64,000 nt of DNA, from positions 1 to 64,000 of the IMG/VR virus record IMGVR_UViG_3300024503_000015. One strand, written 5' to 3'. Position 1 is the first letter of the stretch. Each line of letters begins with the position of its first letter. The notes beneath the pieces are model-generated. The model saw nothing but the letters and a program-made list of their open reading frames with translations. It made no database searches and was not told the origin of the DNA. This document shows positions 4,209 through 34,477 of this stretch, in pieces. The position numbers and the translations under genes were made by a program.

Positions 4209-4309
4209 TTGTAGATATATGGATCCTTCTTGCGAAGAGCTTCCATCCTTTTCTTGAATTTTCTATCTTCAAAGAACTTTTTAATTCTTGCTATTAATTT
4301 AAGAACCAT
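4205..4309 (-). CDS. 34-aa basic peptide coupled to the carbamoyltransferase (not in ORF track)
   Basis: MVLKLIARIKKFFEDRKFKKRMEALRKKDPYIYK; its TGA overlaps the carbamoyltransferase ATG (ATGA). Confidence 0.65.
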   Translation of the reverse strand: MVLKLIARIKKFFEDRKFKKRMEALRKKDPYIYK

Positions 4310-5289
4310 TGTTTTGCCTTTAGTTTAATTTTTAATTCTGTGTCTTCTGTTTCGGACACAATCTTATATAAGGTCTGTAAGCGACCTAATTTTTTAACTG
4401 CATCATTGACGTCTTTAACACCTTCGGGCCAACTGGGCATACTAACGCTGTATCTGTTAGCAATAGCCTGTTCAACTGTGCGCTTTCCATCTGCGTCCCT
4501 GTCTGGAACAACAATAACCTTGCGGCCAAGTCTATTGATTAGCAGAGCCTGTTTATCCATGATTTCTGCGCCAAGGATTGCAACTGCATCTATACTTAGT
4601 GCGTCTACAGGACCTTCGACTACTATCACGAATTCCCTGTCCTGTGTTTGACAGTCCAAATTAAACACATATCCAGGAGTTTGATCCGATATGTATTTGG
4701 GTTTACCTTCTATAACTTTACGAGCAGTATGCCCAACAATACGTCCGTCTAATCTAAATGGTATAATTAATCTATCAGCAAACCCTGCCACAGGACACCA
4801 ATAAAAATCATCCAATGGATTTAAGTTTCTGGACCATACATATTCAACTACTGTGTCAAATTGTGCTCTAAGATCCGCGGGTAATTTTGTTAAATGTTCC
4901 AGCCATTCTTTAATTTGTAGACTGCCTTCGGGCAATGGTTTATCTTCAAACTTAGGAATAGTAACTGCTTCCAATGCCTGTTCATCGGATTGGATCTTTA
5001 GTGCTTCTAAAGTAATTTTATTAATGACATCGTCAGGTGCGCCCATCCAACTTAATAGATTACGCATCTTACGAGTTAAATGTCTGCCTGGTTGATAACT
5101 GGCTTTGTAGCCGCAGTTGAAGCAATGATAACTAATACCATCGCCATTTTGAATCATACCACCACGCTGTCTAGTATCTGCTGTTGTGCCATTATGGTGA
5201 CAGCAGACCGCGTTAAACTTTACCCAACCACTGGGTGTTTGTTTCCGTTTTGCAGGGAGGTACGAATAGATTATCTCACCAATACTCAT
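4294..5289 (-). CDS. gp61: DNA primase (T4 gp61-like)
   Basis: Zn-binding CC..HCFNC, TOPRIM VEGPVDA and PDRDADG, KDVND. Confidence 0.9.
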   Translation of the reverse strand: MSIGEIIYSYLPAKRKQTPSGWVKFNAVCCHHNGTTADTRQRGGMIQNGDGISYHCFNCGYKASYQPGRHLTRKMRNLLSWMGAPDDVINKITLEALKIQSDEQALEAVTIPKFEDKPLPEGSLQIKEWLEHLTKLPADLRAQFDTVVEYVWSRNLNPLDDFYWCPVAGFADRLIIPFRLDGRIVGHTARKVIEGKPKYISDQTPGYVFNLDCQTQDREFVIVVEGPVDALSIDAVAILGAEIMDKQALLINRLGRKVIVVPDRDADGKRTVEQAIANRYSVSMPSWPEGVKDVNDAVKKLGRLQTLYKIVSETEDTELKIKLKAKQWFLN

Positions 5290-8122: not shown

Positions 8123-8586
8123 AATGCCTTTTTAATATCTTTATCTTCCCAACCAAGATCCTTAAGACGTTGCTTAACTTCTTTTTCTGTAGTCATGCTA
8201 GACATAAGTTCGAGTTCGTCTTCTTTCAAGTGTGGATATAGTGTTTCCAATACTTTGATAACTTTACTGTTACCTTCTTTCTTTTTATATCCAATCCATT
8301 CGTGAAAATGAATTTTCTTTTCTTCATTACCAGTCATACAAACAAGATACCACAGTAACTTAGGATGCTTACTAAGACTAAAGTAATGCTTGTTAAAGTA
8401 CTCGTTAGTTTTGAAGATAGCCAACTCTTGCGTTTCTCTGTCGCTGGTTTTAATAGAGCTGGCATACCTAAGCAATAGATAAAGACTGATTTGCTTTCTC
8501 TGTTCTTCTGTGAAATTATCCCATAGATCTCTGGCGCCCATATCAATGGCCGCTGTTTCATCTTTGATAGTTAGTTTATCACTCAT
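8119..8586 (-). CDS. possible clamp loader small subunit (T4 gp62-like)
   Basis: Size and LLRYAS..NEYFN..HEWIGYKKK pattern reminiscent of gp62; replication context; start placed at MSDKL. Confidence 0.45.
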   Translation of the reverse strand: MSDKLTIKDETAAIDMGARDLWDNFTEEQRKQISLYLLLRYASSIKTSDRETQELAIFKTNEYFNKHYFSLSKHPKLLWYLVCMTGNEEKKIHFHEWIGYKKKEGNSKVIKVLETLYPHLKEDELELMSSMTTEKEVKQRLKDLGWEDKDIKKAL

Positions 8587-9205
8587 CTTTAGGAACAATC
8601 CTTACATCAAATGCCATTACAGTTCTATTACCCTTACCCTTCCAAGGATAAACTGTGTGTGGCAGATGGCTTGGAAATACAATAACAGTACCTGGTGTAG
8701 GTTTATATTTCCAATTATCTGTCATAATAAATTTACCAACATCTCTAGTTTGTGGTAATCTAAATGCTACATTGCCGTCTGTTGGAGACAAATTTTCATC
8801 TAAATCTGGAGCAGTGATATAAATGTTTCCGCTGATATTGCCGCCTGGATGTGTATGTAATTCTTGATAGTCTCCCTGCGTCTGACGAATAGTCCAGATG
8901 CTGGTAACAACAGGCTTACACAGTTTTAAATCTTCAGTTCCGCTTTGTGCTGTAATAATTTCCATGTAGCCAGTACAGATGTTTTCAATCCATTTGACTA
9001 ACCAAGAAACATCAATGTTTAGTTGATTAGGATATACTTGTATCTGCTGTCCTCCGCGAATACTAATAAATGGATTATCTGCATCATTCAATTCGGGGTG
9101 TCCGTGTAACATCTCAGACAGACTAAAAATTTGACTAAACTCAACTGGTGGTACTTGGTCAATAGCCAACACAGTTGGTTGAAAATATGCTACCTTTAAA
9201 CTCAT
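8579..9205 (-). CDS. 2OG-Fe(II) oxygenase (TIGR02466-like)
   Basis: HTH..ISGNIYI..FPSHLPHTVYP..R. Confidence 0.85.
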   Translation of the reverse strand: MSLKVAYFQPTVLAIDQVPPVEFSQIFSLSEMLHGHPELNDADNPFISIRGGQQIQVYPNQLNIDVSWLVKWIENICTGYMEIITAQSGTEDLKLCKPVVTSIWTIRQTQGDYQELHTHPGGNISGNIYITAPDLDENLSPTDGNVAFRLPQTRDVGKFIMTDNWKYKPTPGTVIVFPSHLPHTVYPWKGKGNRTVMAFDVRIVPKDE

Positions 9206-9985: not shown

Positions 9986-10002
9986 TTATTCTCCGTTTAT
10001 TA

Positions 10003-11463
10003 TTATTCCCAATTTACCTTTTCAATGGTGAAAGGGTATTTGGCTTCTTTGTAGAATTTCTTTCGCTCTGTTAAGTGCCTTTTTGCATATTTGCAAGTAG
10101 ATGTTATGTCCCAGATTTGGACGAAGTCTTTATCCTCTGCCTTTCTAATGCCACGCCCAATGCTTTGTATAACTCGGACAAAGCTCTTTCCGGGCTCCAA
10201 AAGAACCAGATTAAAAATCCTAGGAATATTAAGACCCACAGCGGCCACACCATAAGTCGCCACAATAACCTTGTTATCACTGTCTTTAACTTCATCGTAA
10301 TGTTCCTTTCGCTCCGTGAGCTTGACTTCTCCGCTGATGAACACGGATCCTGGTATTGCATCTACAATCTGTCTACCTGCATCGAGCCTATCTACTAGTA
10401 TTAATGTGTTGCCTGAGTCTTTAATTGAATTGCATAGTTTTGCGATATAACCGACCCTGTCAACGTCTGTGACAAGGTACTTTAATTCTTCTTGGTATGT
10501 TCTAAATTCTTTAACGTCCATTAACTGAACAATGTTAACGTGACACTGACTGAGCACACCTTTTTCCTGTAATGTATGTGCGCTGATACGATTAACCACA
10601 GGACCGAGTGTTGCTAAAATACTGTGGAAGTTAATTTCTTCTTTGGGAACTGTACCAGTTAAGCCCCAACGAATAGGAGCATTAGCCATGTTCTGGCTTA
10701 ACAATTTCTTCAACACTTCCGCCTTGGCCATGTGTACTTCGTCGACAATTACACAGACTACGCCTTCTAAGAATTCTGCTAGACTTAATGTATCACTGTC
10801 GTAACTTTTCTTGTCTAAGATGTTTAGACTTTGCCATGTGCAGATAGTATGTGTGCGACCTAGTTCTTTTCTATCGCCAAAATATACTCCAACATCTAAG
10901 CCAACGTTCTTATAATCTTCTTCGGTTTGTACCACTAGGCCTTTGTTAGGAACAATAACCAATGAACGACCGTAAGGTTCGACAAGTGCGCTTAATGTTG
11001 CTGTGATAATTGTCTTGCCAGCGCCTGTGGCTAGTTCTTGTAAACCCTGTGGATTCTCCATAAATCCATTGATAGCATCTAATTGATAGTCACGCAGTAC
11101 AATAGGCTGTCCGGCTATAGGATGTCCTTTAGGCCATACCTTCCCTTGGTCGGCCCAATACTGATCTGTAATCTTTGCAAATTCAAATTTATGTGGATTG
11201 CGTAGGTCTTCAATCTCTTCGATATCAACTCCGCACTCTTCTAATATGCCTAGGATAACATCGAGATGATTAAGATAACCATTCCCGCCAAGACCAAAAA
11301 ACGTAGTAGTTCCATCCCATCTTCCTAATTTATACTGAGGCATATGGCGAGCATATGGTAATTCAAATTTAAGTGCATTAGAGATCTTCCTGCGAATCTC
11401 TACAGGTAATCCGTCTATCTTAATATTAACTTCGTCTCTGATGACAATTTTACAACTGGACAA
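10003..11463 (-). CDS. uvsW: SF2 DNA helicase UvsW
   Basis: LRDYQ, ATGAGKT, DEVH, GLTGT, QSIGRGIR. Confidence 0.92.
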   Translation of the reverse strand: MSSCKIVIRDEVNIKIDGLPVEIRRKISNALKFELPYARHMPQYKLGRWDGTTTFFGLGGNGYLNHLDVILGILEECGVDIEEIEDLRNPHKFEFAKITDQYWADQGKVWPKGHPIAGQPIVLRDYQLDAINGFMENPQGLQELATGAGKTIITATLSALVEPYGRSLVIVPNKGLVVQTEEDYKNVGLDVGVYFGDRKELGRTHTICTWQSLNILDKKSYDSDTLSLAEFLEGVVCVIVDEVHMAKAEVLKKLLSQNMANAPIRWGLTGTVPKEEINFHSILATLGPVVNRISAHTLQEKGVLSQCHVNIVQLMDVKEFRTYQEELKYLVTDVDRVGYIAKLCNSIKDSGNTLILVDRLDAGRQIVDAIPGSVFISGEVKLTERKEHYDEVKDSDNKVIVATYGVAAVGLNIPRIFNLVLLEPGKSFVRVIQSIGRGIRKAEDKDFVQIWDITSTCKYAKRHLTERKKFYKEAKYPFTIEKVNWE

Positions 11464-12697
11464 TTTGTCTTGTTCCTTTTATTCTTCCATGTCTTACGGA
11501 CACTGAGTTATTATAATAGTAAACTGTAGAAAAGTCATTCAGGTACGCTGAAGTTTTTCCATGTTCGTATGTTGATGTTACTAGAGCAGTTCTAGGTTTC
11601 CAGTCTGCGTTAAAAAGTGGTTTAGGTATGCGATTTTTAGACACAAATACCACTTTAGTCTTTGAGTCTATATAATTATTTAAGTGGTTATCCCTGACGA
11701 ATTGGTTAAACTCCTCGTGGTCAGGATTACCATTTTCTAATCTAAAGAACACAGTTATTTCTCCGTCGTTGCATCGTTGCATCAAACACTGACACAACCC
11801 TTTGATCTGAGAAATTGCTTCTTTTGTCTCGTCAACTATTACCAAAAGCGGCCATTGCTTTAATGCGTCTAATATATCAAAGAGACTATCCATAGTATGT
11901 TCTTCGGGATTAAGACGAAATCTTGTCTCCGGAGAAACCAGGATAGTTTTAATTAAATTATTAGGGCTGATCTCGGTGATTTTTTCAATAATTTTGCGAT
12001 TTTTATGGTAAATTCCACAATTTTTCACCCTGTCTAAAAAAACAAGAAAATCTGAGTCTTTACGATCAGGCATCTCTTTATCTAAGTATTCTTGACAACG
12101 AAAATTTATATTTTTCAAAACTGGTTCGTTGTCAACAATATCCACGTAAGGTGCAAAATTGTCAGGATTTAGGTAAATTTCTTCGATTTTTTCATATAGT
12201 GCTTCTACGTCTTCAGTAATGATAAATCCCAATGGGCGTAGTGTGTTGACTATAAGGTAAAGGTCTTGTTCGTTGAATGATAACTTCTTTTCACCTTTGG
12301 TCTCTTGACAACTTGCAGTTAGTTGTTCTTGTAAATTTGACCAAATTCCGGCAAATTTCTTAGAAAATACGAATTTTATTAAAACTTTGATTTTGTTGTC
12401 TGAGTCGGTGACCAAGGATATCGTTTGCGTTCTATCAATTTGTCTTATAGGCAAACGTAGTGTCTTAAGTGCCAGCAAACTTTCCACATCTACCGAATTT
12501 TGTTCTAAGCCAAGCCGATATTTTTCAATTTTTTTGATGGCTAAGTCTAATTGCCTGTCGGTCAGCGCAGTACCGCGGTTAACTTGTCGTGCAAGACTTT
12601 TGACTAGATTAACTTCTCCAAAGTCAATACGAATATTCACGGCACGACTAGTTAGTCCTGCTAAAATTTCTAATGCGTCCTCAACGGTATGTGTCAT
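11450..12697 (-). CDS. hypothetical protein upstream of UvsW
   Basis: 415-aa ORF overlapping the uvsW start. Confidence 0.75.
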   Translation of the reverse strand: MTHTVEDALEILAGLTSRAVNIRIDFGEVNLVKSLARQVNRGTALTDRQLDLAIKKIEKYRLGLEQNSVDVESLLALKTLRLPIRQIDRTQTISLVTDSDNKIKVLIKFVFSKKFAGIWSNLQEQLTASCQETKGEKKLSFNEQDLYLIVNTLRPLGFIITEDVEALYEKIEEIYLNPDNFAPYVDIVDNEPVLKNINFRCQEYLDKEMPDRKDSDFLVFLDRVKNCGIYHKNRKIIEKITEISPNNLIKTILVSPETRFRLNPEEHTMDSLFDILDALKQWPLLVIVDETKEAISQIKGLCQCLMQRCNDGEITVFFRLENGNPDHEEFNQFVRDNHLNNYIDSKTKVVFVSKNRIPKPLFNADWKPRTALVTSTYEHGKTSAYLNDFSTVYYYNNSVSVRHGRIKGTRQIVQL

Positions 12698-12728
12698 ATT
12701 TTATATTATAACACATTTTTTGACGTTG

Positions 12729-13574
12729 TCAACGATTTAGTACATTTAATATACGTTTTTGTGGAATGCCTTGGCTAATCTCATCAACGGTCCATTCGGT
12801 GTGTAGTATTTGATGAAACCAATTTTGTCTGTCAGGCAAGAAAATTTCATTAATTTTTGAAATACTAGAACTAAGTGGATGTGCCAGACTGGTTTTATCA
12901 CAAATTATAGGTATTCCTGCGATTGCCGCTTGGGTGCCAGGGCCACTGTTGTGACTAATCACACAATGATGGTCAAATGCAATGTCAAATTTGTCATAAG
13001 TGCCTGGAATTTTATTAGGTTGTTCAAAAATTATACCAGGTATAGGTGCAGTACCAATCGGATGACGAGGATGGGGTCGAAAAATTATGGGTCTGTCTGT
13101 ATATTTTTGAATTTCGGCAACTTTTTGAGATAACCAGGTTCTAGTAGTGGGCTGATTTTGCCATTGTAGGCTTCTTTCATGTTGGCCAACAATTAATATA
13201 GAATTTTTTCTCGAAGATTTTACATCCTGAAGACCTATACCTAATTTTCTCGCTCTGTCATAGTCGATATTTTCGGTATTTCCGTAAATTCCTTCATTGC
13301 TGATGTGATTAGCAGAAATTTTCCATGTACGACCTCGATCCAGTGCTCCAACTTCAATGATGAATACTGGTTTATTCATACTGCGGTAGTGCGTATAGAC
13401 ATTTTCGTTCATACGCATACGACCATTCCACAAAACACTCCAAATCACAGCACAATCTGCATCTTTGCTGTTTTCTCTCGGCTCAATACCAATTTGTCTA
13501 CAGCCGTCAAGGAATGATCCCCATATAGGTTCCGATTGTAATGCTGTCTGATTAGGAAAGTAGGCTATCTTCAT
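12729..13574 (-). CDS. GT-B glycosyltransferase-like (capsule synthesis KpsS-like)
   Basis: RPHP and HNSGPGTQAAIAGIPII motifs; start at MKIAYF next to promoter box. Confidence 0.65.
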   Translation of the reverse strand: MKIAYFPNQTALQSEPIWGSFLDGCRQIGIEPRENSKDADCAVIWSVLWNGRMRMNENVYTHYRSMNKPVFIIEVGALDRGRTWKISANHISNEGIYGNTENIDYDRARKLGIGLQDVKSSRKNSILIVGQHERSLQWQNQPTTRTWLSQKVAEIQKYTDRPIIFRPHPRHPIGTAPIPGIIFEQPNKIPGTYDKFDIAFDHHCVISHNSGPGTQAAIAGIPIICDKTSLAHPLSSSISKINEIFLPDRQNWFHQILHTEWTVDEISQGIPQKRILNVLNR

Positions 13575-13577
13575 AGA

Positions 13578-13589
13578 GTAAATATTTAC
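13578..13589. promoter_or_regulatory. palindromic bidirectional late promoter
   Basis: GTAAATATTTAC perfect palindrome in a 15-bp divergent intergenic gap. Confidence 0.7.
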
Positions 13590-14384
13590 ATGATTATACC
13601 GCCACTGCAAGGAAAATTAAGCCACACCGATTTTTTCATCTATGGAGCCTGTGATGAGAAATATTTTGATGAATTTGGAAAATCTTTAATTAACAGCATT
13701 CAAAAAAATAGTAATAATAATATTCACATTCATTTGTTTAATCCTAGACAAGATCAATTAGATTTTTGTCAAAATAAAAATGTTTCTTACTCGTATGAGT
13801 ATGCTCCTTTAGATTTATTTTTAAATGCCGCAAACAAGTGGTCGCAAAATTTAATTAATCCTGATGATTTAGAGAGAAAACAACGTATTTTAAAATCTAT
13901 GGAAAAAGGCGGCGACAAATCTATTATTGAACGAGTACAAAAAACTTATTTTGCCTGTGCTAGATTTATACGTTTAAAAGAATTAATACAACCAACACAA
14001 CCATTCTTTTCTATAGATGTTGATGCTGTTGTTAGAAAAAATATTGTTTCATTAGCATCTACTAAACATTTTTATATACACCAAGTTCCAGGAAAGAAAT
14101 CTAGATTTTTAGCAGGAGGACTGATGTCTCCAGGAAATGTTGAAACAAGTCAGTTTCTATCAGAATATGCAAATCTTCTTGAAATTAATTTAAAAGGCGA
14201 TTACATTTATTGGGGATTGGACCAAGATGTACTTTTACCACTAGTGCCAAAGTACAATTATGGAAATTTACCCATGTCATACATCGACTGGGAAATGAAT
14301 GCTCACAGTTGCATCTGGACTGCTAAAGGTGTTAGAAAAAGTTTAAAGATTTTTGTAGAAGAACAATCGCGTTATTTGATATAA
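13590..14384 (+). CDS. GT-A nucleotide-diphospho-sugar transferase-like protein
   Basis: YFACARF, DVD (DxD), WGLDQDVL. Confidence 0.6.
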   Translation: MIIPPLQGKLSHTDFFIYGACDEKYFDEFGKSLINSIQKNSNNNIHIHLFNPRQDQLDFCQNKNVSYSYEYAPLDLFLNAANKWSQNLINPDDLERKQRILKSMEKGGDKSIIERVQKTYFACARFIRLKELIQPTQPFFSIDVDAVVRKNIVSLASTKHFYIHQVPGKKSRFLAGGLMSPGNVETSQFLSEYANLLEINLKGDYIYWGLDQDVLLPLVPKYNYGNLPMSYIDWEMNAHSCIWTAKGVRKSLKIFVEEQSRYLI

Positions 14385-15322
14385 TTTCTCATGTGATTCC
14401 AGCATCTGCCCGATCTGGTATCGTCGAAACTCCAATGACATTGTGCAAGTTTCTTAATCCACTGTTCTCTATCTGCTAGTATAGGATTTTCTAATTTACT
14501 AAAATCTGTATTAGCAACATCGCCTCCTTGACTGTAACTAGGATCGTCTGTAATAAAAGCAGGTATACCTTCTATTGGAGCAACGGCACTAGGCGTACTA
14601 TTATGACAAACTAGTGCCCAACAATTAATTAAATCTTCAGTGATATGTCTTTCTTGAGGACTAATTGTAGCATTATATTTTTTTAATAACGGTGCATAAT
14701 TTGAAAAATTCTTCCAGTCTCCGGGATGCCAACGAATAACAACGGGACGGTCAGAATAAGTTCTTATTTTAGTAAATGTTTCCTCTAACCACTTCATTAG
14801 ATTGTAACCTCGCATACTCCAACCCATGGGGCGTTGTAGTGTAATAAGAATATGATTTCCAGTTGAACGCCACGGTTTTAAATCCATATCATAATCGCGT
14901 TTAATATTGTTCCAGTTTTCTTCTCCAGGATTATCGTTACAATAGATACCTGTTGCCGGAAATACGCCATTGAAACTATATCTTAAATATTTTTTAGGGT
15001 TTTCTTTATTCTTATAGATGAACACGTTACTATCAATACTAAGCCAATATCTTCCATTTTTAATCTGTGTGTCCATTACCATTTTACGAACTTTATAATG
15101 GTCCAACGTAGTTTTACTTGGATTTGCATCGAAGGCATTTCCAATAATTGCACCCACGTCACAAGGTTCATATTGATAAGAAGTTGTAGTAGATGCCAGG
15201 TCTCCACATTTTGCGGCGCCTTCTGCAAAGTATGTTAGTGCATTTACTTTCTCGGTGCCATTGATATGCTTAGGTAGGCTACTAAGATAACTTTTAATAA
15301 TTAATTGTTTCGCGTTGTTCAT
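14372..15322 (-). CDS. GT-B glycosyltransferase-like (KpsS-like paralog)
   Basis: RWHP and HNSTPSAVAPIEGIPAF motifs. Confidence 0.65.
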   Translation of the reverse strand: MNNAKQLIIKSYLSSLPKHINGTEKVNALTYFAEGAAKCGDLASTTTSYQYEPCDVGAIIGNAFDANPSKTTLDHYKVRKMVMDTQIKNGRYWLSIDSNVFIYKNKENPKKYLRYSFNGVFPATGIYCNDNPGEENWNNIKRDYDMDLKPWRSTGNHILITLQRPMGWSMRGYNLMKWLEETFTKIRTYSDRPVVIRWHPGDWKNFSNYAPLLKKYNATISPQERHITEDLINCWALVCHNSTPSAVAPIEGIPAFITDDPSYSQGGDVANTDFSKLENPILADREQWIKKLAQCHWSFDDTRSGRCWNHMRNYIK

Positions 15323-16274
15323 TTTCTAAAACCATTCTCCAAGCATCGCCTGTTATCATTTCTTCTAGATGAAATTGTCCGTAGGCCAGCGAACTACACC
15401 ACTTATAAACAAAACTCTCGTCAGGGTAAAACGGTGTTTCTATCTTTGACAAATCTTTTAAACACACCGGATCCGCCGCAGTAGGTGCTGTAGTAAATGC
15501 AGGTATTCCATAGGCTACTGCTTCTATGGCCGCAATACTATTAAGTGTGACTACAGCAAAAATATCTTCGTCTAGTGCTTGATATATTGTTTTTTTAAAC
15601 GTTCTATCTGGCCTTGACATTTTTTCTCTAATAACAATTTCTCTATCTGTATATTTTTTTAATGTATCAACAGTAGACGCAATCCAAGAATCTTTTGTAT
15701 AACCGTAGTTCCCTGCAGATTTATCAATTGGTGCTATCAGTAAAATTTTGCTGCCGGATTTTTTCCATCCTTTCCATTTTAAATTTTCATCTATGGCACA
15801 AAGTTGTTCCCATCTGTCACCGGGCACATTTAAAATTTTTTCGTGTTGCATGGAATTTTTTACAATTCTATGCCATAATTTTTTAGCATTTGGATTAACA
15901 GTTGTTCTGTAGTTTCCAAAGTATCCAGTTTCTATAAAATAATAATCTAATCCTTTGTCTTTAACTAAGTTAATATAATCGGTAGATGCAATGCCTCTAA
16001 CTAATATTGGTTTAGTGATATTTTTAACAAATTTAAATTCGTTATACAGTTGTATATCTTTATCAGGAAAACTAATCATAGTTAACGCTGTTAAATCTGT
16101 ATCTGCAATTAATCGAAGAAAAAGATTCTGTTTTTGTTCTAAAATAACGTTATTATTTTTCTTTCTAAGTTCTTGTATTTCGTGATAAATTTTATAAACG
16201 ATTTGTGCTTGATCGATTATTCTATCTATATTCGATGTACTGGTAGACTTAGCCAGTGCCGTCGGAATAATCAT
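15294..16274 (-). CDS. GT-B glycosyltransferase-like (KpsS-like paralog)
   Basis: ETGYFG and VVTLNSIAAIEAVAYGIPAF motifs. Confidence 0.65.
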   Translation of the reverse strand: MIIPTALAKSTSTSNIDRIIDQAQIVYKIYHEIQELRKKNNNVILEQKQNLFLRLIADTDLTALTMISFPDKDIQLYNEFKFVKNITKPILVRGIASTDYINLVKDKGLDYYFIETGYFGNYRTTVNPNAKKLWHRIVKNSMQHEKILNVPGDRWEQLCAIDENLKWKGWKKSGSKILLIAPIDKSAGNYGYTKDSWIASTVDTLKKYTDREIVIREKMSRPDRTFKKTIYQALDEDIFAVVTLNSIAAIEAVAYGIPAFTTAPTAADPVCLKDLSKIETPFYPDESFVYKWCSSLAYGQFHLEEMITGDAWRMVLENEQRETINY

Positions 16275-17028
16275 TAAAAATTCCCCACATTAAAGTTTTT
16301 GTCAGCGAGTCTTTGCCGTCTACGTCAATTGCCGCACGACCCATTAATTGATTGTGAAATTCTAAATTTACAACGAATTTATTCATAGCAGTATCTGCGG
16401 GTAATACTTCTTCTCTGTAAGCATCTACTAATTTTTTTGCTCCTGCAGGTGTAATTCCGTAACCCACGGCTCCAGGCATCGATGTGTTTGGTAATTTAAG
16501 TGCTTCTGCTTTTTTTGGCGGATTATATAGATATTCAGCATATTTTGGATTTTCGTAAGCACTCTTTCCAGTACATAACATTAATATATCAGTCCATACT
16601 ACTGGAGTATATCCTCTTTCAAATATTACATCATCTTCAAAAATAAAAATAGGCTCGTCTAATTCTATACATAGTTTCCAAAGTCTATAATGGCTGTAAA
16701 AACAACCAATAACTCCTGGTCTTAAAGTTTTTTCCTGTAATTTCGGATCTGTAGATATATCTATTCTTATATTAATACTTCCTACTTCTTCTGGAAATTC
16801 GGAGTCAGGAAATCTAGATTTATATTCATCTATAGAGATAGTTTCAGTTTTTATTCCATATTTGGCAACCCGTCTCTTATCTTGTTTAAAAAGATAAACA
16901 CCTTCGTCTCCATATGTTCCTTCAAATATTTGTGCATCGAACCCGTATTCGATTAATTTTTCTAAAACTTGTGCAGAACTATTTGCTGAACTAGGTATCT
17001 TAGTTAAAGATATAACAAATGCTTTCAT
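16249..17028 (-). CDS. glycosyltransferase family 25
   Basis: AFVISL, GCFYSHYRLWK, IFEDDV. Confidence 0.85.
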   Translation of the reverse strand: MKAFVISLTKIPSSANSSAQVLEKLIEYGFDAQIFEGTYGDEGVYLFKQDKRRVAKYGIKTETISIDEYKSRFPDSEFPEEVGSINIRIDISTDPKLQEKTLRPGVIGCFYSHYRLWKLCIELDEPIFIFEDDVIFERGYTPVVWTDILMLCTGKSAYENPKYAEYLYNPPKKAEALKLPNTSMPGAVGYGITPAGAKKLVDAYREEVLPADTAMNKFVVNLEFHNQLMGRAAIDVDGKDSLTKTLMWGIFNDYSDGTG

Positions 17029-17702
17029 ACAGAAAAAACTACCTCATGTCTATAACGATCAACAATTTTATAATTATAAAATTTTAATAAATTTTCAATT
17101 TCTGAAAAAGGTTTATTATATCTGTCGCCGTGGCCAACTTCTTCGACTGCTATCACAGGAAGATATTTTTCAATGGTATTTTTTGCACCATTTAGTGCAT
17201 ACCATTCATATCCTTCAATATCAAGGTGTATAAAAGAACATGCGTCTAAATTTAAATCGTCGATTAATAATGTTGGAATTTTATCAGGCCTGATACCGTT
17301 GCGTTGCATTTTTATTAAATTGGTTTTTATATCTATATGGTTTTTACCTCTGTCGTGATCTCTATATGTAACATTAACTAAATTTCTAGAATCGCCGAGA
17401 CATGCCTGATATTTCATAATGTGTCTCTCAGGATTGTTTAACGTAAGACACAGAAAATTAATATTATCAGGCTCGAATACGTAAACCCTTTCAAAACATT
17501 TTGCATACAGTTGTGTAAACCATCCCATATTGCCACCGGCCTGTACTATAACTTCTTTATTTGAAACAAACGACATTAAATGTTCAGGGAGATCAATTTC
17601 TTTTTTAGTAAAATTATAACAGGCAGTTTCATTTTTTGCCCACCAGAGCCCGTCACGATTTTCTAAATATTCATTAATCATTTGATATCTCTTTGTTGAC
17701 AA
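17025..17702 (-). CDS. FkbM-family SAM methyltransferase
   Basis: QAGGNMG, VFEPD, LDIEGYE..LNGA. Confidence 0.85.
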   Translation of the reverse strand: MSTKRYQMINEYLENRDGLWWAKNETACYNFTKKEIDLPEHLMSFVSNKEVIVQAGGNMGWFTQLYAKCFERVYVFEPDNINFLCLTLNNPERHIMKYQACLGDSRNLVNVTYRDHDRGKNHIDIKTNLIKMQRNGIRPDKIPTLLIDDLNLDACSFIHLDIEGYEWYALNGAKNTIEKYLPVIAVEEVGHGDRYNKPFSEIENLLKFYNYKIVDRYRHEVVFSV

Positions 17703-18364
17703 TACTCGGTTAGTATGCGTTCACGATGCCATTCGTTGCCCTGTGGCGTATCGGCAAACTCGTGAAAGCAAGGTGCTCCTAGAGTATAATGTAATAATTT
17801 AGCATCCGGATTAGCACCGTACTCGTCAGGAAGCCAATTCCATTCCTTAGGTAATTCTCCAACGCGACTGTCATCGGTCCATTCAAATCTATGTAAATGT
17901 GCGCCTGTAGATTTTTGAATATATTCTGGTGTTAGTTTTTTAGTTGGGAAATTACTACAATTGAATAACATTACACTACTCCAGTTTTTACGTGGATAGT
18001 CTTCATTCTTTGAACCAAGATACTTAACAGGCATCTTTGTCTTGTAATCGTGTTTTACAACCTGCACATCTTTACTAGTTTCTTTAAGTTCCCACAACTC
18101 TGCAATATCTCCTCGAACAATCATATCGCCGTCCATAAAGATAGCATGACCAGAAAAGCCAGTTAAGTAAGGCACAAGGAATCTACTATAGATGAATTGA
18201 TTACTACCGTCTGTGTGCGTTTCGGTATAATCTTTAAAATTGTTTAATGCTAAAGGTGTGATACTAACAGGTACACTAGAGTTTCTAATGATACTGTTAG
18301 CGCATACATGGTATGCTATTGCTTCTCTGGGATCATACCCAATAAAAATAGGAATAGGTCGCAT
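17678..18364 (-). CDS. GT-A glycosyltransferase (GT8-like)
   Basis: IFIGYDPRE, SRFLVPYL, FMDGDM, YPRKNWSS, LHYTLG. Confidence 0.85.
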   Translation of the reverse strand: MRPIPIFIGYDPREAIAYHVCANSIIRNSSVPVSITPLALNNFKDYTETHTDGSNQFIYSRFLVPYLTGFSGHAIFMDGDMIVRGDIAELWELKETSKDVQVVKHDYKTKMPVKYLGSKNEDYPRKNWSSVMLFNCSNFPTKKLTPEYIQKSTGAHLHRFEWTDDSRVGELPKEWNWLPDEYGANPDAKLLHYTLGAPCFHEFADTPQGNEWHRERILTEYCQQRDIK

Positions 18365-18372
18365 AATAGTAG

Positions 18373-18378
18373 TATTTA
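18373..18378 (-). promoter_or_regulatory. late promoter box at the head of the GT operon
   Basis: TTAAATACT on the - strand, 8 nt before ATG 18364. Confidence 0.55.
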
Positions 18379-18399
18379 ACCATTATGCAACCTGGGAGT

Positions 18400-18855
18400 T
18401 TATAGCGTGGCGTCTTCCATACCAGCAACACGTAATTTAACAATGTTAGTAATCTGCCATTGTTTTTGATCCAGTGCTTTGGTAATGCCTAGCCATTTGT
18501 TTCTTAGCAGAGCAAATTCGTTGATAATCTTTTCCATATCAACAACATCTGCTTCGCCTTCAACATATTTTTCTACATCTCTACTGCTTAATGCACGAGC
18601 ATAATTTTCTAAATATTTTCGGAAATGACTGCTCTTAAGTCTTCGTAATTCAATATTCAAATACTCGAGAACAGCCTCTATTTCCTGTAGTTGGCTAAAA
18701 CGTTGTTCCACAATGCCTGGCATACTGGCCGCTGCCTTTTCTAAATTACCCGTTATACGGCATTCATTCCTTGCGGCCAATAATTCGGCTTCAAAGTATG
18801 TTACAGCATCTGGAATATTACTGATATCATCAGCAATTTTGTTATACCAACCCAT
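18400..18855 (-). CDS. uvsY: recombination mediator UvsY
   Basis: Helical 151 aa; YVEGEADV and WQITNIVKLRVAG; next to UvsX. Confidence 0.8.
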   Translation of the reverse strand: MGWYNKIADDISNIPDAVTYFEAELLAARNECRITGNLEKAAASMPGIVEQRFSQLQEIEAVLEYLNIELRRLKSSHFRKYLENYARALSSRDVEKYVEGEADVVDMEKIINEFALLRNKWLGITKALDQKQWQITNIVKLRVAGMEDATL

Positions 18856-19106
18856 TAGTCCTCGTCATAGTCGTGTGAATCATAATCAATCTCGTCCTCA
18901 GTTTCGCCATCCCAGTCATCGAGATAGTATTCGATAGCGGCATCAAGATCTTCGTCTCCGCCTATTGCGGCTTTGAAAACATGATCCTGAACACCGTTAT
19001 CGGCGAGGATATCAACGTACTTACTTGCGACAGTTTCAATTTGCTTTTTATCAAAAAACTCTTTTAGTCCTGTCCATATATCAATGATATGATCTTCATT
19101 CAACAT
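18855..19106 (-). CDS. hypothetical acidic protein
   Basis: Coupled between uvsX and uvsY. Confidence 0.75.
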   Translation of the reverse strand: MLNEDHIIDIWTGLKEFFDKKQIETVASKYVDILADNGVQDHVFKAAIGGDEDLDAAIEYYLDDWDGETEDEIDYDSHDYDED

Positions 19107-20163
19107 TTTCTAAAATCTCTCCAGTTTCAAGGTCGATGTTAGATTGTACAATAGGATTCTTAGCAAAGTCAACCATGACTTTATCCAGGCATCCGTCTTC
19201 ATTGCGTTCCCACTCTTTACGATAGAACTTCAATTCTTCCGACCCTGCGTATTTAAGTCGATTGCCATCTTTTTGCAAGAAACCCTTGGCTTCAAACAAG
19301 TCTACCAATCCACTGTAGGGATTCATACCTGTCTCGTAAGGGATTTTAACTTGAACACTTTCAAAAGGTTTAGCATAGCGTGTCTTCATAATCTTACAAG
19401 CCGCACGAATACCTTTAACTTCTGAAATTTTGTTGCCGTCTTCGTCTTCTTTAAGTTTGAGCTTTTTCATAGCAACAACAATACTTGATGCGTAGATAAA
19501 GCCCTGTCCACCTGAAATTTTATCATCGGGATCAAACATATCTTGACTAGCGTATGTATGGTTAGTTGCTACCAAACCAACGTTGTTGCTACCAAACATG
19601 TTTACACAGTTACGAACAAGTGCTGTAAGTGCTTTAGGCTTACGGCCCATATCACCTTTCAAATCGCCTGCTTCAAACTGATTAACGTCTGTAGGTGTTA
19701 ACAACATACCCAACGAGTCAATAACAAACAAGACCTTTGGACGGTCTTCCATTACCTTGTACTCTTTCATAAACTCATTGATAGTTTTAGCAACGTCATC
19801 AATCATAGCCATGTTAAGTTTTAGTAATTTGTCTTCGCTGGTGTCTACGCCAAGTGCGTGTAACCATTTCTCGTCCAAGGCGTTTTCGCTGTCAATTAAG
19901 ACAACATAGATACCTTGTTCCTGTGCGTGACGTACAATATTGCCAGAACAAATATATGATTTGCCTGCACCAGATTCGCCAGCGAATACAGTAACCTTGC
20001 CCAAAGGAATACCTCTATGGAAGTCACTGCTAATCAAATAGTTTAGCGCATAGTTACCAGTGCTAACCCAGTCAGTTGGGTCTTGGAAACCTACACTAAG
20101 TCCGTCGATGCTCTTAGTTAGAGTTTTACGGAATTTAGATAAATCAAATGCTTTAGTTGCCAT
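19096..20163 (-). CDS. uvsX: RecA-like recombinase UvsX
   Basis: GESGAGKS, DSENA, VIDSLG, NHTY, SGGQG. Confidence 0.93.
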   Translation of the reverse strand: MATKAFDLSKFRKTLTKSIDGLSVGFQDPTDWVSTGNYALNYLISSDFHRGIPLGKVTVFAGESGAGKSYICSGNIVRHAQEQGIYVVLIDSENALDEKWLHALGVDTSEDKLLKLNMAMIDDVAKTINEFMKEYKVMEDRPKVLFVIDSLGMLLTPTDVNQFEAGDLKGDMGRKPKALTALVRNCVNMFGSNNVGLVATNHTYASQDMFDPDDKISGGQGFIYASSIVVAMKKLKLKEDEDGNKISEVKGIRAACKIMKTRYAKPFESVQVKIPYETGMNPYSGLVDLFEAKGFLQKDGNRLKYAGSEELKFYRKEWERNEDGCLDKVMVDFAKNPIVQSNIDLETGEILENVE

Positions 20164-20417: not shown

Positions 20418-21395
20418 TTATTGCTTTTGACGATTGCGAATCATCGCAAGAATGTCTTCTGCACGACCGCTACCACTTGCTGGAGCAGAGGCTGTTTCAG
20501 CCTTTGGTGCAGGAGCACTTACTTTAGGAGCAGGTGCTTCGTCTGGATCAATGTTATGGTCTGCCGCTGGAGCAGATGTACCTGCTGTTGGGTCGCCTGT
20601 TACAGAACCCATACCTGCTGGACGGAAGTATTGTCCCCATGCTTCTTTGTCAAACGGTTCACCGTCAACTGATGCTTGGAACATTTCTTTGATAACTTTG
20701 AGCTCAACATCACCTGGCTTCTTAGGCAAGAAGTCATTTAAGTTGAATAAACCGTGTGCCTTGACTGCGTCAAGTTCTGCATCGGTTAATGGGCGTTCAC
20801 GACGGCTCCACTTTGATGTAGAATAATCAGCATAGCCACCTTTGCTGGTCTTGACCAATTTAAAGTCAACGCCACGTGCGAAGTCTGTTGGCAATTCTTC
20901 CAACTCTGGGTCAACTAATGCTGACTTGATTAATTGGAAAATTTGTGGACCGATAATGAATCGGCGAATTGGATTTTCTGGATGTGAATCTTCTTTCAAT
21001 CCGTCTTCTACTACAAAGCCTTGGAAAATGTATGAACGCTTTTTCCAGTACTTACGACCCAAGTCTTCAAGACTCTTATCCTTAAACCAACCACGCACCT
21101 CACTAAGGATTGGGCAAGTTTCACCATACATTTCCATACATGGTACTTGAACTTGTACTGGTTTAGAATCTGTTTCGCCTTTAATACCAGCGAAAGGTAA
21201 CTTGATCATTAGGCGTTCTGCCCAAAAGAAAGTATTGTCTCCATTACCATCTGGTAGGAAACGTACTGTGGATTCTTTGTTTTGATCTAAGTTCCAGAAC
21301 GGATAGATTGCGTTGTCACCAACGGGGCGGTCACCGCCGCTTGATCTTGTTTCTTGTGCCTGTAGTTTTGCACGAATTTCTGCTAATGTGGCCAT
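20418..21395 (-). CDS. gp32: single-stranded DNA binding protein (T4 gp32-like)
   Basis: VRFLPD, CP..YWKKRSY, GYADYSTSKW; strong AAGGAGA RBS. Confidence 0.88.
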   Translation of the reverse strand: MATLAEIRAKLQAQETRSSGGDRPVGDNAIYPFWNLDQNKESTVRFLPDGNGDNTFFWAERLMIKLPFAGIKGETDSKPVQVQVPCMEMYGETCPILSEVRGWFKDKSLEDLGRKYWKKRSYIFQGFVVEDGLKEDSHPENPIRRFIIGPQIFQLIKSALVDPELEELPTDFARGVDFKLVKTSKGGYADYSTSKWSRRERPLTDAELDAVKAHGLFNLNDFLPKKPGDVELKVIKEMFQASVDGEPFDKEAWGQYFRPAGMGSVTGDPTAGTSAPAADHNIDPDEAPAPKVSAPAPKAETASAPASGSGRAEDILAMIRNRQKQ

Positions 21396-34141: not shown

Positions 34142-34477
34142 ATGCGACCTTTATGCAAGATCTGTCAAAAGAAACCCTGTGCTATAAACTATTACAAGGG
34201 TAAACGTGCTTATTATAGAACTAAGTGCGATGGTTGTGCCAGCGGCACTAGTCAAGGTATGCCTGTGTGGTACAGACTAGGTTATAGACAAAAAGATTAT
34301 TGCGAAAAATGCGGGTACAAAAGTAAGTTTAAAGAAGTGTTTAATGTCTTCCACGTAGACGGAGATTTAACTAACTGTAGACCCGCTAACCTTAAAACTG
34401 TGTGTGCAAATTGTCAACGGTCTTTACACCGCGAGGGAGTGAAGTGGCGGCAAGGAGATCTAACACCAGACTTCTAA
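34142..34477 (+). CDS. HNH-like zinc-binding endonuclease-family protein
   Basis: CxxC pairs; HVDGDLTNCRPANLKTVCANC. Confidence 0.75.
   Translation: MRPLCKICQKKPCAINYYKGKRAYYRTKCDGCASGTSQGMPVWYRLGYRQKDYCEKCGYKSKFKEVFNVFHVDGDLTNCRPANLKTVCANCQRSLHREGVKWRQGDLTPDF

What the first reader, a model, noticed from the sequence alone, without database searches (positions are those of the whole stretch)
12729..18364. Late-expressed glycan-building island of six GT-like genes and an FkbM methyltransferase
Seen: three paralogous GT-B KpsS-like genes sharing an NS-x5-6-GIP motif, one GT25, one GT8-like, one DxD GT-A and one FkbM methyltransferase sit between uvsY and uvsW, headed by late boxes, with an AT-rich central part. 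No nucleotide-sugar synthesis genes are present in the window. Inference: the phage builds a multi-sugar, O-methylated glycan. Late timing favours decoration of virion proteins, possibly on hydroxyl groups made by the oxygenase island, or host surface masking, over DNA glucosylation.
Basis: partly seen in the sequence, partly recalled or inferred. Interest (0 to 1): 0.6.

Follow-up and report, generated by a model that had tools for sequence, protein, structure and literature searches.

The report
Late-type glycan-building island in a jumbo phage
A river-dwelling giant phage carries seven sugar-handling genes between uvsW and uvsY. Five form a scaffold kept across the whole phage lineage, and they carry the same promoter box as the virion genes, so the phage most likely builds its own glycan, but the target molecule is still unknown.

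Summary
Window 12729-18364 encodes six glycosyltransferase-like proteins and one FkbM methyltransferase between uvsW and uvsY.

- **Gene identities.** GT25, FkbM and GT8 pass Pfam cut-offs. The DxD protein folds as a retaining GT-A enzyme. The three paralogues fold like retaining beta-Kdo transferases (KpsC, WbbB, KrkA; Z 13-14.5).
- **Failed motif.** All three paralogues lack the QXXXD aspartate nucleophile. Two keep the CMP-binding RxHP motif and one has lost it, so they are not members of those families.
- **Genome.** This is a riverine T4-related jumbo phage, 270 kb and about 71% complete.
- **Conservation.** Across 56 related loci, GT8, the three paralogues and the GT-A gene are kept in every locus that reaches their positions. 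GT25, FkbM and, in relatives, nucleotide-sugar genes swap in and out.
- **Timing signals.** All three transcription units start at an NTAAATA box that otherwise precedes virion genes. A gp55-like late sigma factor is encoded elsewhere in the genome. Flanking early genes use sigma-70 promoters.
- **DNA target.** No route to hydroxylated DNA bases was found here or in a 93%-complete relative.

Best reading (0.4): a soluble late-expressed line that glycosylates a phage protein. Host LPS-type lipid (0.25) and DNA (0.12) remain rivals. Late timing alone does not exclude DNA.

The parts
12729..13610 (-). P1, a KpsC-like paralogue. The ORF runs from TTG at 13610, but the likely real start is ATG 13574. 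Its motifs are Q-H-E-R-S (Ser at the nucleophile position) and R-P-H-P.
   Evidence: Orthologues at 36-81% (99% in near-identical contigs) keep QHxxS and RPHP.
13578..13589 (.). Palindromic late-type box GTAAATATTTAC between the divergent start codons of P1 (13574) and P2 (13590). It places TAAATA 8 nt and 5 nt upstream of the two ATGs.
   Evidence: GTTAAATATTTAAC is conserved at the same place in L004, L005, L029, L042 and L057, although the proteins there are only 38-47% identical.
13590..14384 (+). P2, a retaining-type GT-A glycosyltransferase of the GT6/GT8/GT24 clan with an invariant D143-V-D145. GC is 0.31. It is the least conserved scaffold gene.
14372..15322 (-). P3, a KpsC-like modified GT-B protein with motifs Q163-R-P-M-G167 and R197-W-H-P. 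It is the best-conserved island gene: 68-100% identity in 55 of the 56 related loci and 56% in L065, similar to UvsX.
15294..16274 (-). P4, a divergent KpsC-like paralogue that has lost both the Gln of QXXXD and the HP motif (P-I-D-K-S and R-E-K-M). The loss is conserved in its orthologues.
16249..17028 (-). GT25-family glycosyltransferase (E131-D-D). An accessory gene, found at this position only in the nearest relatives.
17025..17702 (-). FkbM-family SAM methyltransferase. An accessory gene.
17678..18364 (-). GT8-family glycosyltransferase (D78-G-D80). First gene of the five-gene minus-strand operon and a scaffold gene (69-100% in relatives, 41% in L065).
18373..18379 (-). Late-type box TTAAATA, 8 nt upstream of the GT8 start codon.
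   Evidence: GGTTAAATACTACTATT-ATG recurs in the six other contigs whose GT8 is 81-100% identical (L014, L017, L019, L020, L023, L060), and L012, L029 and L049 carry a TAAATA box in a different sequence.
18356..18393 (-). Hairpin after uvsY that overlaps the late box and the GT8 start codon. RNA-library contigs of uvsY end here.
   Evidence: High-depth contigs end at 18361 and 18367 in two metatranscriptomes.
12705..12732 (-). Boundary feature rather than part of the island: a perfect sigma-70 promoter (TTGACA-16-TATAAT, preceded by TG) whose -35 hexamer contains the P1 stop codon. It drives the 415-aa ORF and uvsW.

Best explanation
The island is a cytoplasmic glycan-assembly line that the phage switches on with its late genes.

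- **Scaffold.** Five genes (GT8, P4, P3, P2, P1) are kept throughout this jumbo-phage lineage. They build a core oligosaccharide from host nucleotide sugars: UDP-hexoses for the two GT8-like GT-A enzymes, and a CMP-activated ulosonic acid such as Kdo for P1 and P3, which keep the CMP-binding RxHP motif.
- **Mechanism of P1 and P3.** Both lack the aspartate nucleophile of retaining Kdo transferases. They probably transfer by direct displacement rather than through a covalent enzyme-sugar adduct.
- **P4.** It has lost the donor motifs and may be a non-catalytic partner or use another donor.
- **Accessory cassette.** In this phage it is GT25 plus FkbM, which would add a further hexose and an O-methyl group. 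Relatives carry other glycosyltransferases, methyltransferases and rare-sugar pathways in the same slots, giving strain-specific glycans on a common core.
- **Acceptor.** The most likely acceptor is a phage-made protein, probably a virion component.

What is shown: gene identities, folds, motif states, conservation pattern and promoter class. What is inferred: donors, mechanism, order of steps and acceptor.
For: - **Identities and folds:**
- **Motif definitions:** PMC12887879 and PMC10148158.
- **Motif states:** P3 has QRPMG plus RWHP; P1 has QHERS plus RPHP; P4 has neither. These states are conserved in orthologues.
- **Family:** within the family, 19 of 51 members keep QXXXD. Two of 51 reach Pfam Capsule_synth.
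- **Viral range:** the nearest Atlas clusters are all viral. BFVD hits include four Tetraselmis virus 1 proteins, two of them named 'capsule polysaccharide biosynthesis' proteins, at TM 0.69-0.76, and a CcrColossus protein.
- **Scaffold versus cassette:** seen in 56 loci.
- **Solubility:** no membrane segment in any of the seven proteins.
- **Late-type signals:** 45 of the 111 TAAATA sites in the genome lie within 60 nt upstream of a start codon. In the window they precede terminase, sheath, tail tube, adaptor and virion proteins. All three island units have one, and the boxes are conserved in relatives. A gp55 homologue gives E 6.5e-9.
- **Early signals on the flanks:** neighbouring genes use sigma-70 promoters.
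- **Transcription in situ:** RNA-library contigs cover the island. In three of four runs the contigs break or drop in depth at the uvsY/GT8 junction.
- **Other phages:** the family sits beside a tail-protein gene and the lysis cassette in CcrColossus. In a spring podovirus it sits beside a TibC-type glycosyltransferase and the terminase.
Against: - No acceptor was identified, and nothing here shows a glycan on any protein.
- Known KpsC/WbbB/KrkA enzymes act on lipid or glycan acceptors, not proteins.
- The family mix (Kdo-transferase-like, GT8, GT25) is also that of an LPS-core assembly line.
- The island lies among replication and recombination genes, not structural ones.
- 'Late' rests on promoter class and analogy with T4, not on a time course.
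- Contig-level RNA data cannot give transcript levels or ends.
- P1, P3 and P4 lack the catalytic Asp and could be inactive or do different chemistry.
Confidence: 0.4

Rival explanations
1. The island remodels a host envelope glycolipid. The soluble enzymes act at the inner face of the inner membrane on lipid A-core, or on a phosphatidylglycerol-linked Kdo primer as KpsS and KpsC do. This would change the LPS core or capsule linker, for example to stop progeny virions re-adsorbing to debris or to exclude other phages.
For: - The family mix matches LPS/LOS core assembly: Kdo-transferase-like fold, two GT8-like enzymes related to LgtC and to the LPS glucosyl- and galactosyltransferases, and GT25, the 'LPS biosynthesis' family.
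- Such enzymes need no membrane segment.
- Donors would come from the host, which fits the absence of sugar-nucleotide genes.
- Three KpsC/S-like modules parallel KpsS plus the two modules of KpsC (PMC12887879).
- Relatives carry what look like O-antigen or capsule sugar pathways.
Against: - The transcription signals are late-type.
- No flippase, ligase or exporter lies in the island or the flanks examined.
- The nearest Atlas clusters are all viral, and the fold occurs in an algal giant virus whose host has no LPS.
- P3 stays 68-100% identical across nearly all of a lineage (56% in the most distant locus, L065) that presumably infects several hosts.
- The Asp nucleophile of the capsule-linker enzymes is missing.
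Confidence: 0.25
2. The island hypermodifies phage DNA by building an oligosaccharide on a hydroxylated base after replication. This would resemble T4 glucosyl-hmC, RB69 arabinosyl-5hoC, or the metavirome 5hmC glycans that include Kdo.
For: - The island sits inside the uvsW-uvsY-uvsX-gp32 replication and recombination module.
- A dNMP kinase is encoded at 34392-35072.
- There is precedent for GT-A (LPS-like) and GT-B phage enzymes adding one to three sugars, Kdo and heptose to 5hmC (bioRxiv 2023.12.21.572611).
- Such transfers are said to happen late (PMC13326640).
- Variable cassettes fit an arms race with restriction systems.
Against: - No source of a hydroxylated base. The one ThyA homologue is canonical: 361 bits, with PCH and PFNIAS motifs carrying the dUMP-specific Asn.
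- No Tet_JBP and no C5-methylase in 270 kb.
- A 93%-complete relative that has the scaffold has no ThyA homologue and no Tet_JBP.
- No T4 alpha-GT homologue, and no T4 glucosyltransferase family hit.
- The top solved structures are Kdo transferases, not beta-GT.
Confidence: 0.12
3. The scaffold makes a free or carrier-bound product that is neither a virion glycan, nor LPS, nor DNA. Examples would be a small-molecule glycoside, a storage or decoy polysaccharide, or glycosylation of a host protein. Alternatively, the KpsC-like trio are pseudoenzymes with a structural or regulatory role.
For: - All three KpsC-like proteins lack the Asp nucleophile, and P4 also lacks the CMP motif.
- P2's structural neighbours include protein-targeting enzymes: glycogenin, UGGT, GlyE and YeGT.
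- No acceptor was identified.
Against: - P3 is under strong purifying selection, with Q163, R197, H199, P200, S242, G252 and P254 conserved. This argues for a working nucleotide-sugar site.
- The family consistently sits next to other glycosyltransferases and methyltransferases.
Confidence: 0.15

Closest known systems
Retaining beta-Kdo glycosyltransferases: KpsC and KpsS (GT107), WbbB (GT99), KrkA (GT140)
   Same: - Same modified GT-B fold: P3 scores Z 12.9-14.5 over about 250 residues against all three families, above generic GT-B proteins at 11.3 or less.
- Same (K/R)XHP CMP-binding motif in P1 and P3.
- The Gln of QXXXD sits in the same register after the first strand of the C-terminal domain, 36 residues before the His.
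- There are three modules, as in KpsS plus the two modules of KpsC.
   Different: - The nucleophilic Asp is Gly in P3 and Ser in P1 and P4.
- P4 also lacks the Gln and the HP motif.
- There is no Pfam Capsule_synth match for the window's proteins.
- The proteins are single-module, soluble and phage-encoded.
- Donor and acceptor are unknown.
Virus-encoded virion glycosylation: mycobacteriophage capsid and tail-tube O-glycans (Freeman et al. 2023, cited in PMC12619734); chlorovirus and mimivirus glycans (from my own knowledge)
   Same: - Soluble virus-encoded glycosyltransferases, with methyltransferases in chloroviruses.
- A conserved core with strain-specific decoration.
- Expression with the virion genes.
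- Structural homologues of P3 occur in a giant algal virus.
   Different: - No glycan has been shown here.
- The genes are not next to structural genes.
- The enzyme families differ from the mycobacteriophage ones.
Phage DNA sugar-hypermodification clusters: T4 alpha- and beta-GT, RB69/DLP3 arabinosylation, 5mYOX-linked glycosyltransferases
   Same: - Several glycosyltransferases of LPS-like ancestry in a T4-related genome, placed among DNA-metabolism genes.
- Variable sugar chemistry.
- Kdo has been reported as a DNA appendage.
   Different: - Those clusters contain or neighbour a thymidylate-synthase homologue with altered specificity, or a C5-methylase plus TET-like oxygenase, often with a dCTPase and an extra kinase.
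- None of the first three was found here or in a near-complete relative.
Bacterial group 2 capsule (kps) and O-antigen loci
   Same: - Conserved genes, including Kdo-transferase-like ones, flank a hypervariable cassette of glycosyltransferases and sugar-nucleotide pathways.
   Different: - No export or polymerase genes.
- A phage genome with late-type phage promoters.

Membership tests
Retaining beta-Kdo glycosyltransferases (GT99/GT107/GT140) | Modified GT-B fold shared by KpsC, WbbB and KrkA | tested here: met
   P3 model has pLDDT 95. The top 15 VIA rows are all these enzymes, at Z 12.9-14.5 and rmsd 3.8-4.8 over 239-258 residues; the next family scores 11.3. P1 and P4 are inferred from homology of the C-terminal half only.
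Retaining beta-Kdo glycosyltransferases (GT99/GT107/GT140) | QXXXD motif with an absolutely conserved Asp nucleophile (PMC10148158, PMC12887879) | tested here: not met
   P3 has Q163-R-P-M-G167, P1 has Q-H-E-R-S, and P4 has P-I-D-K-S. These states are conserved in orthologues. Within the wider family, 19 of 51 members do have QXXXD.
Retaining beta-Kdo glycosyltransferases (GT99/GT107/GT140) | (K/R)XHP CMP-binding motif | tested here: met
   P3 has R197-W-H-P and P1 has R-P-H-P; the family is 47/51 His and 48/51 Pro. The motif is not met in P4, which has R-E-K-M, a loss conserved in its orthologues.
Retaining beta-Kdo glycosyltransferases (GT99/GT107/GT140) | General-base Glu in the N-terminal domain, and use of CMP-beta-Kdo as donor | not testable with these tools
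   A nearly invariant Asp (D55 of P3, 46/51) is a candidate base. No residue-level superposition or assay was available.
Pfam Capsule_synth (PF05159; KpsS/KpsC) | Match to the family profile above its cut-off | tested here: not met
   P1, P3 and P4 give no hit at E <= 0.1. Only 2 of 51 family members reach it, best E 9.4e-5. One related viral Atlas cluster has it in 18% of members.
GT8 (PF01501) | Profile match above cut-off, plus a DxD motif | tested here: met
   P7 (17678-18364) scores 35 bits against a cut-off of 24.3 and has D78-G-D80. P2 has no Pfam match, but its fold is that of retaining GT-A enzymes (Z 14-15 to GT8, GT6 and GT24 members, all tied) and D143-x-D145 is invariant. P2 is assigned to the clan, not to the family.
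GT25 (PF01755) | Profile match above cut-off | tested here: met
   74.7 bits against a cut-off of 24, over profile positions 3-199 of 199.
FkbM methyltransferases (PF05050 / TIGR01444) | Profile match above cut-off | tested here: met
   43.8 bits against 22.7, and 50.6 bits against 37.7. The substrate (sugar O-methylation) is inferred.
T4-type late transcription unit | A gp55-like sigma factor in the genome, and a TATAAATA-like -10 box just upstream of the unit that is shared with virion genes | tested here: met
   A gp55 homologue lies at 112601-113431 (E 6.5e-9). The box is NTAAATA, not TATAAATA. It precedes eight structural or packaging genes in the window and all three island units, and it is conserved in relatives. 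Actual timing was not measured.
Phage DNA sugar-hypermodification cluster | A source of a hydroxylated base: a thymidylate-synthase homologue with altered specificity, or a C5-methylase plus TET/JBP oxygenase | tested here: not met
   Only a canonical ThyA is present. There is no Tet_JBP and no DNA_methylase. The 93%-complete relative G001 has no ThyA homologue and no Tet_JBP. This record is only about 71% complete.
Phage virion glycosylation system | Glycan covalently attached to a virion protein, dependent on the phage glycosyltransferases | not testable with these tools
   Needs virions or co-expression followed by mass spectrometry.
Capsule or O-antigen export-coupled locus | ABC transporter or Wzx/Wzy, and ligase or export genes | not tested
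   None appeared among the island or its flanks. No dedicated genome-wide search was run.

The most novel reading that the evidence does not exclude
P1 and P3 would found a large, mostly viral and so far unnamed glycosyltransferase family. It descends from the retaining Kdo-transferase fold but has replaced the Asp nucleophile (QxxxGW and QHxxS variants) while keeping the CMP site. That would make them direct-displacement CMP-ulosonic-acid transferases.

Together with two GT8-like enzymes, they would lay down a conserved acidic core glycan on virions of a widespread freshwater jumbo-phage lineage. Swap-in cassettes would then diversify that core, making the island in effect a phage 'serotype locus' organised like a bacterial capsule locus.
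Probability: 0.2. Interest if true: 0.75.

Novelty: new variant of a known kind. Interest (0 to 1): 0.55.

Why it matters
**Scale of the family.** Phage-encoded glycans are only beginning to be recognised, on mycobacteriophage virions and on hypermodified DNA. The family behind P1, P3 and P4 has no Pfam model. It counts 4089 clusters at 50% identity with E <= 0.001 and is found in jumbo phages, T4-like pelagiphages, Caulobacter giant phages, podoviruses and an algal giant virus.

**A mechanistic test case.** The split between members with and without the nucleophilic Asp is a natural experiment on how retaining Kdo transferases work.

**An evolutionary model.** A conserved five-enzyme scaffold with exchangeable sugar cassettes, found in at least 56 related loci, suggests that phages diversify a glycan the way bacteria diversify capsules. 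That would bear on phage-host recognition, on phage immunogenicity and stability, and on the annotation of thousands of 'hypothetical' viral genes.

Tried and rejected
**Searches that found nothing or failed**
- Megablast of 10000-19200 against 50,697 phage records: no match.
- Sequence search of the paralogue profile and of P2 against PDB: nothing meaningful.
- NCBIfam: nothing for P1-P4 or for the GT8 protein.
- The search for related loci with the family alignment in genome contigs failed because no conserved stretch was available, so bacterial contexts were not sampled.
- T4 alpha-glucosyltransferase has no homologue in the genome.

**Readings considered and dropped**
- Cyanophage origin: the UvsW best hits are jumbo phages of Sinorhizobium, Agrobacterium, Pseudomonas and Vibrio at 50-57%.
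- Canonical TATAAATA late boxes: only three in the window and none in the island.
- Identity with the 'moraphage' lineage (PMC12619734): could not be established.
- Longer tblastn 'matches' of about 1400 nt in some loci: probably the union of the P3 hit with the neighbouring P4 paralogue, not an insertion (inference, not checked).

**Limits of the evidence gathered**
- Short contigs for distant family members showed only methyltransferase, pyruvyl-transferase and GT4 neighbours, which says nothing about the acceptor.
- RNA data were assembled contigs only. I report where they lie and do not treat them as transcript levels.

Full report
**What the window is.** The window is the first 64 kb of a 270,181-bp IMG/VR virus record with GC 39.5%, judged about 71% complete. 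UvsW (10003-11463) is 50-57% identical to helicases of Sinorhizobium phage Phosso, Agrobacterium phage Atu_ph07, PA5oct-like Pseudomonas phages and a Vibrio jumbo phage. This is a T4-related jumbo myovirus. The same DNA occurs at 99-100% of sampled words in 18 riverine metagenome runs and in part in six riverine metatranscriptomes.

**Gene order around the finding.**
- DnaB-like helicase, 1783-3252
- carbamoyltransferase N-domain protein, 3261-4208
- primase, 4294-5289
- a 2OG-Fe(II) oxygenase, 8579-9205
- UvsW
- a 415-aa ORF with no family hit, 11450-12697
- the island
- UvsY, 18400-18855
- UvsX, 19096-20163
- gp32-like protein, 20418-21395
- then terminase, tail tube, sheath and other virion genes

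**Checking the observation.** Seven ORFs fill 12729-18364.
- Three reach curated Pfam cut-offs: GT25 (74.7 bits), FkbM (43.8 bits, also TIGR01444) and GT8 (35 bits).
- P1, P3 and P4 are true paralogues. BLASTP gives 2e-12, 1e-11 and 3e-9 over the C-terminal half, and they are the only three copies in the genome. They share N-S-x9-G-I-P, not x5-6.
- P2, on the opposite strand, has an invariant D-x-D.
- The central genes are AT-rich, at GC 0.31-0.34 against 0.395.
- No protein has a membrane segment.

**What the unannotated proteins are.**

P3 was folded with a 51-sequence alignment and gave pLDDT 95.2.
- Foldseek's best solved matches are KpsC, WbbB and KrkA.
- On re-alignment, all 15 top rows are these retaining beta-Kdo transferases, at Z 12.9-14.5 over about 250 residues. 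UDP-GlcNAc 2-epimerase follows at 11.3 and a polysialyltransferase at 10.5.
- Among predicted viral structures the matches are much closer. Four Tetraselmis virus 1 proteins (two of them named 'capsule polysaccharide biosynthesis protein') reach TM 0.69-0.76, alongside proteins of uncultured phages and of Caulobacter phage CcrColossus.

P2 also gave pLDDT 95. It matches retaining GT-A enzymes of GT6, GT8 and GT24 (BoGT6a, glycogenin, LgtC, GlyE, UGGT) at Z 14-15. These are all tied, so only the clan can be named.

**The membership test fails on the key residue.** The literature defines retaining Kdo transferases by three features (PMC10148158, PMC12887879):
- a QXXXD motif whose Asp forms the covalent Kdo adduct;
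- a (K/R)XHP motif that binds CMP;
- a general base in the N-terminal domain.

In P3 the Gln and the RxHP motif sit in the expected register. Q163 follows the first strand of the C-terminal domain and H199 lies 36 residues later, against 38 in KpsC-N. The Asp position, however, is Gly (QRPMG). P1 has QHERS with RPHP. P4 has neither the Gln nor HP (PIDKS, REKM). Each state is conserved in the orthologues of that gene.

In the wider family the position is Gly in 27, Asp in 19 and Ser in 4 of 51 members. There are two co-varying signatures, QxxxDAS and QRxxGWS. The window's proteins therefore work from the same fold and probably the same type of donor, but they are not members of GT99, GT107 or GT140. 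They most likely do not use double displacement. That last step is inference.

**A very large, mostly viral family.**
- A profile search of 1.84 billion representatives found 4089 clusters at E <= 0.001 and 2527 at E <= 1e-10.
- None of the listed close homologues carries a Pfam domain or a name beyond 'hypothetical'.
- Only 2 of 51 sampled members touch Capsule_synth and 5 touch DUF6716.
- The nearest Atlas clusters are all viral.
- Some members are fused to TPR repeats and a GT-D-like domain.

**Conservation: scaffold and cassettes.** I examined fifty-six related loci, four from JGI contigs of up to 341 kb and 52 from IMG/VR.
- GT8, P4 and P3 occur in every locus that reaches their positions. 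P2 and P1 occur in nearly all loci that extend far enough downstream.
- UvsX and UvsY lie upstream in most loci, and UvsW lies a few kb downstream in many.
- Identity to the window's proteins is 68-100% for P3 in 55 of the 56 loci (56% in L065), similar to UvsX (76-100%). GT8 is 69-100% (41% in L065), P4 43-100%, P1 36-99% and P2 38-100%.
- GT25 and FkbM at this position occur only in the nearest relatives. Elsewhere, distant GT25-like or FkbM-like genes (24-40%) sit in another slot and often on the other strand.
- The gap between P3 and P2 ranges from 0 in this window to about 6.8 kb. In relatives it holds Polysacc_synt_2, RmlD/Epimerase, Epimerase_2, GT2, Gly_transf_sug, GT-D-like and methyltransferase genes.
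- The slot before GT8 can hold a methyltransferase and a cytidylyltransferase-cupin fusion. Radical-SAM genes sit further upstream, around uvsX and uvsY.

This phage has a minimal cassette and no sugar-nucleotide genes anywhere in its 270 kb.

**Timing signals.**
- Canonical TATAAATA is absent from the region.
- The hexamer TAAATA occurs 111 times on both strands of the genome, and 45 of those lie within 60 nt upstream of a start codon in the sense direction.
- ATAAATA is 37-fold enriched in upstream gaps.
- In the window the box precedes terminase, sheath, two tail-tube-like genes, a head-tail adaptor and three virion structural proteins.
- The island's three transcription units each start at such a box:
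  - TTAAATA at 18379-18373, 8 nt before the GT8 ATG, which heads the overlapping GT8-FkbM-GT25-P4-P3 operon;
  - the palindrome GTAAATATTTAC at 13578-13589, which serves P2 (5 nt away) and P1 (8 nt away, using ATG 13574).
- Both elements are conserved in relatives, including loci whose P1 and P2 are only 38-47% identical.
- A homologue of the T4 late sigma factor gp55 lies at 112601-113431 (E 6.5e-9), behind a sigma-70-type promoter.
- The flanking 415-aa ORF, the primase and the dNMP kinase have near-perfect sigma-70 promoters.
- By analogy with T4 spacing, the island mRNAs would be leaderless or nearly so. This is inference.

**RNA libraries.** Contigs from four riverine metatranscriptomes lie on the island. 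In two runs, high-depth contigs covering uvsY (about 26-28x) end at 18361 and 18367, at the hairpin 18393-18356. In a third, the high-depth (20x) uvsY contig is seen only from 18474 upward. Island contigs in these three runs are at 2-5x. In the fourth run the depths are similar. These are assembled contigs, so this is weak evidence. It suggests that the island is transcribed in nature and separately from uvsY.

**The target.**

*DNA.* This is a serious rival. Phage GT-A and GT-B enzymes of LPS-like ancestry add one to three sugars, Kdo and heptose to 5hmC, and such transfers are described as late events. Known pathways, however, need a hydroxylated base.
- The single ThyA homologue is canonical: 361 bits, with PCH and PFNIAS motifs.
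- There is no Tet_JBP and no C5-methylase.
- A 93%-complete, 320-kb relative with the scaffold has neither a ThyA homologue nor Tet_JBP.
- No T4 alpha-GT homologue exists.

*Host LPS or capsule-linker remodelling.* This fits the enzyme families and their solubility. It fits poorly with three things: the late-type signals, the all-viral nearest relatives of the family in the Atlas search, and homologues in an algal virus.

*Protein, probably virion, glycosylation.* This fits the promoter class, the core-plus-decoration pattern, and the contexts in other phages. In CcrColossus the homologue gp128 lies just after a tail-protein gene and before the lysis cassette. Its neighbours are a sialyltransferase-like gene, an NDP-sugar transferase and a GT9-like gene. 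In a spring podovirus the homologue lies by a TibC-type glycosyltransferase, a methyltransferase, terminase and portal. In pelagiphage Mosig it lies among two methyltransferases, two glycosyltransferases and a sulfotransferase.

None of this shows a glycan on a protein. I commit to this reading at 0.4.

**Novelty and verdict.** Phage glycan islands are known in kind. What is new here:
- the unnamed, mostly viral KpsC-like family and its nucleophile-less branch;
- the three-paralogue, five-enzyme scaffold conserved next to uvsY across a freshwater jumbo-phage lineage;
- the capsule-locus-like cassette exchange;
- the conserved bidirectional late-type box.

I rate it a new variant of a known kind, with interest 0.55.

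Noticed in passing
window 3261-4208 (-): A 315-aa protein with only the N-terminal (Kae1-like) domain of NodU/Nol-type carbamoyltransferases (PF02543 at 1e-27; PHROG 1601). It is wedged between the replicative helicase and the primase. It could O-carbamoylate a sugar or a base.
   Followed up: no
window 11450-12732 (-): A 415-aa ORF with no hit in Pfam, PHROGs or NCBIfam lies between the island and uvsW. It is driven by a perfect TTGACA-16-TATAAT promoter, preceded by TG, whose -35 hexamer contains the P1 stop codon. It is conserved only in the closer relatives, at 48-100%.
   Followed up: partly
G000 112601-113431 (-), outside the window: A homologue of the T4 late sigma factor gp55 (E 6.5e-9), itself behind a sigma-70-like promoter at 113484-113456.
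   Followed up: partly
whole genome, e.g. window 13590, 18364, 24115, 25722, 27120, 29967, 44099: Thirteen genes have the TAAATA box only 3-8 nt from the start codon and no Shine-Dalgarno sequence. This suggests a class of leaderless or near-leaderless late mRNAs.
   Followed up: no
G000 208000-268000: Strong sigma-70-type promoters (at least 11 of 12 matches) are dense here. Of 43 in the genome, 39 are on the minus strand, many before ORFs too small for my gene caller. This is probably the early region.
   Followed up: no
G000 143365-144204 (-): A canonical thymidylate synthase (361 bits, with PCH and PFNIAS motifs). The 93%-complete relative G001 lacks any ThyA homologue.
   Followed up: yes
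L004 10944-14808, L005 10910-14387, L012 10944-14384: The relatives' cassette pairs Polysacc_synt_2, RmlD/Epimerase and Epimerase_2 genes. From memory this resembles the CapE/F/G (WbjB/C/D) route to UDP-L-FucNAc-type sugars. Not tested.
   Followed up: no
L004 5032-6276, L005 2599-3753 and 5065-6231, L012 3290-4444 and 5756-7012: Relatives carry one or two radical-SAM genes, one with a SPASM domain, next to uvsX and between uvsX and uvsY. They are absent from this window.
   Followed up: no
P0225 and P0264 (metagenomic proteins): Family members of 1082 and 1143 aa are fused to TPR repeats and a GT-D-like domain. From memory, TPR repeats recall protein-targeting glycosyltransferases.
   Followed up: no
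window 16249-17028 (-): The GT25 protein also matches PHROG 61, annotated '2OG-Fe(II) oxygenase' (1e-9, profile positions 61-176 of 689).
   Followed up: no
window 34392-35072 (-): A T4-type dNMP kinase (PHROG 139 at 3e-52) behind a sigma-70-like promoter, sitting among virion genes.
   Followed up: no
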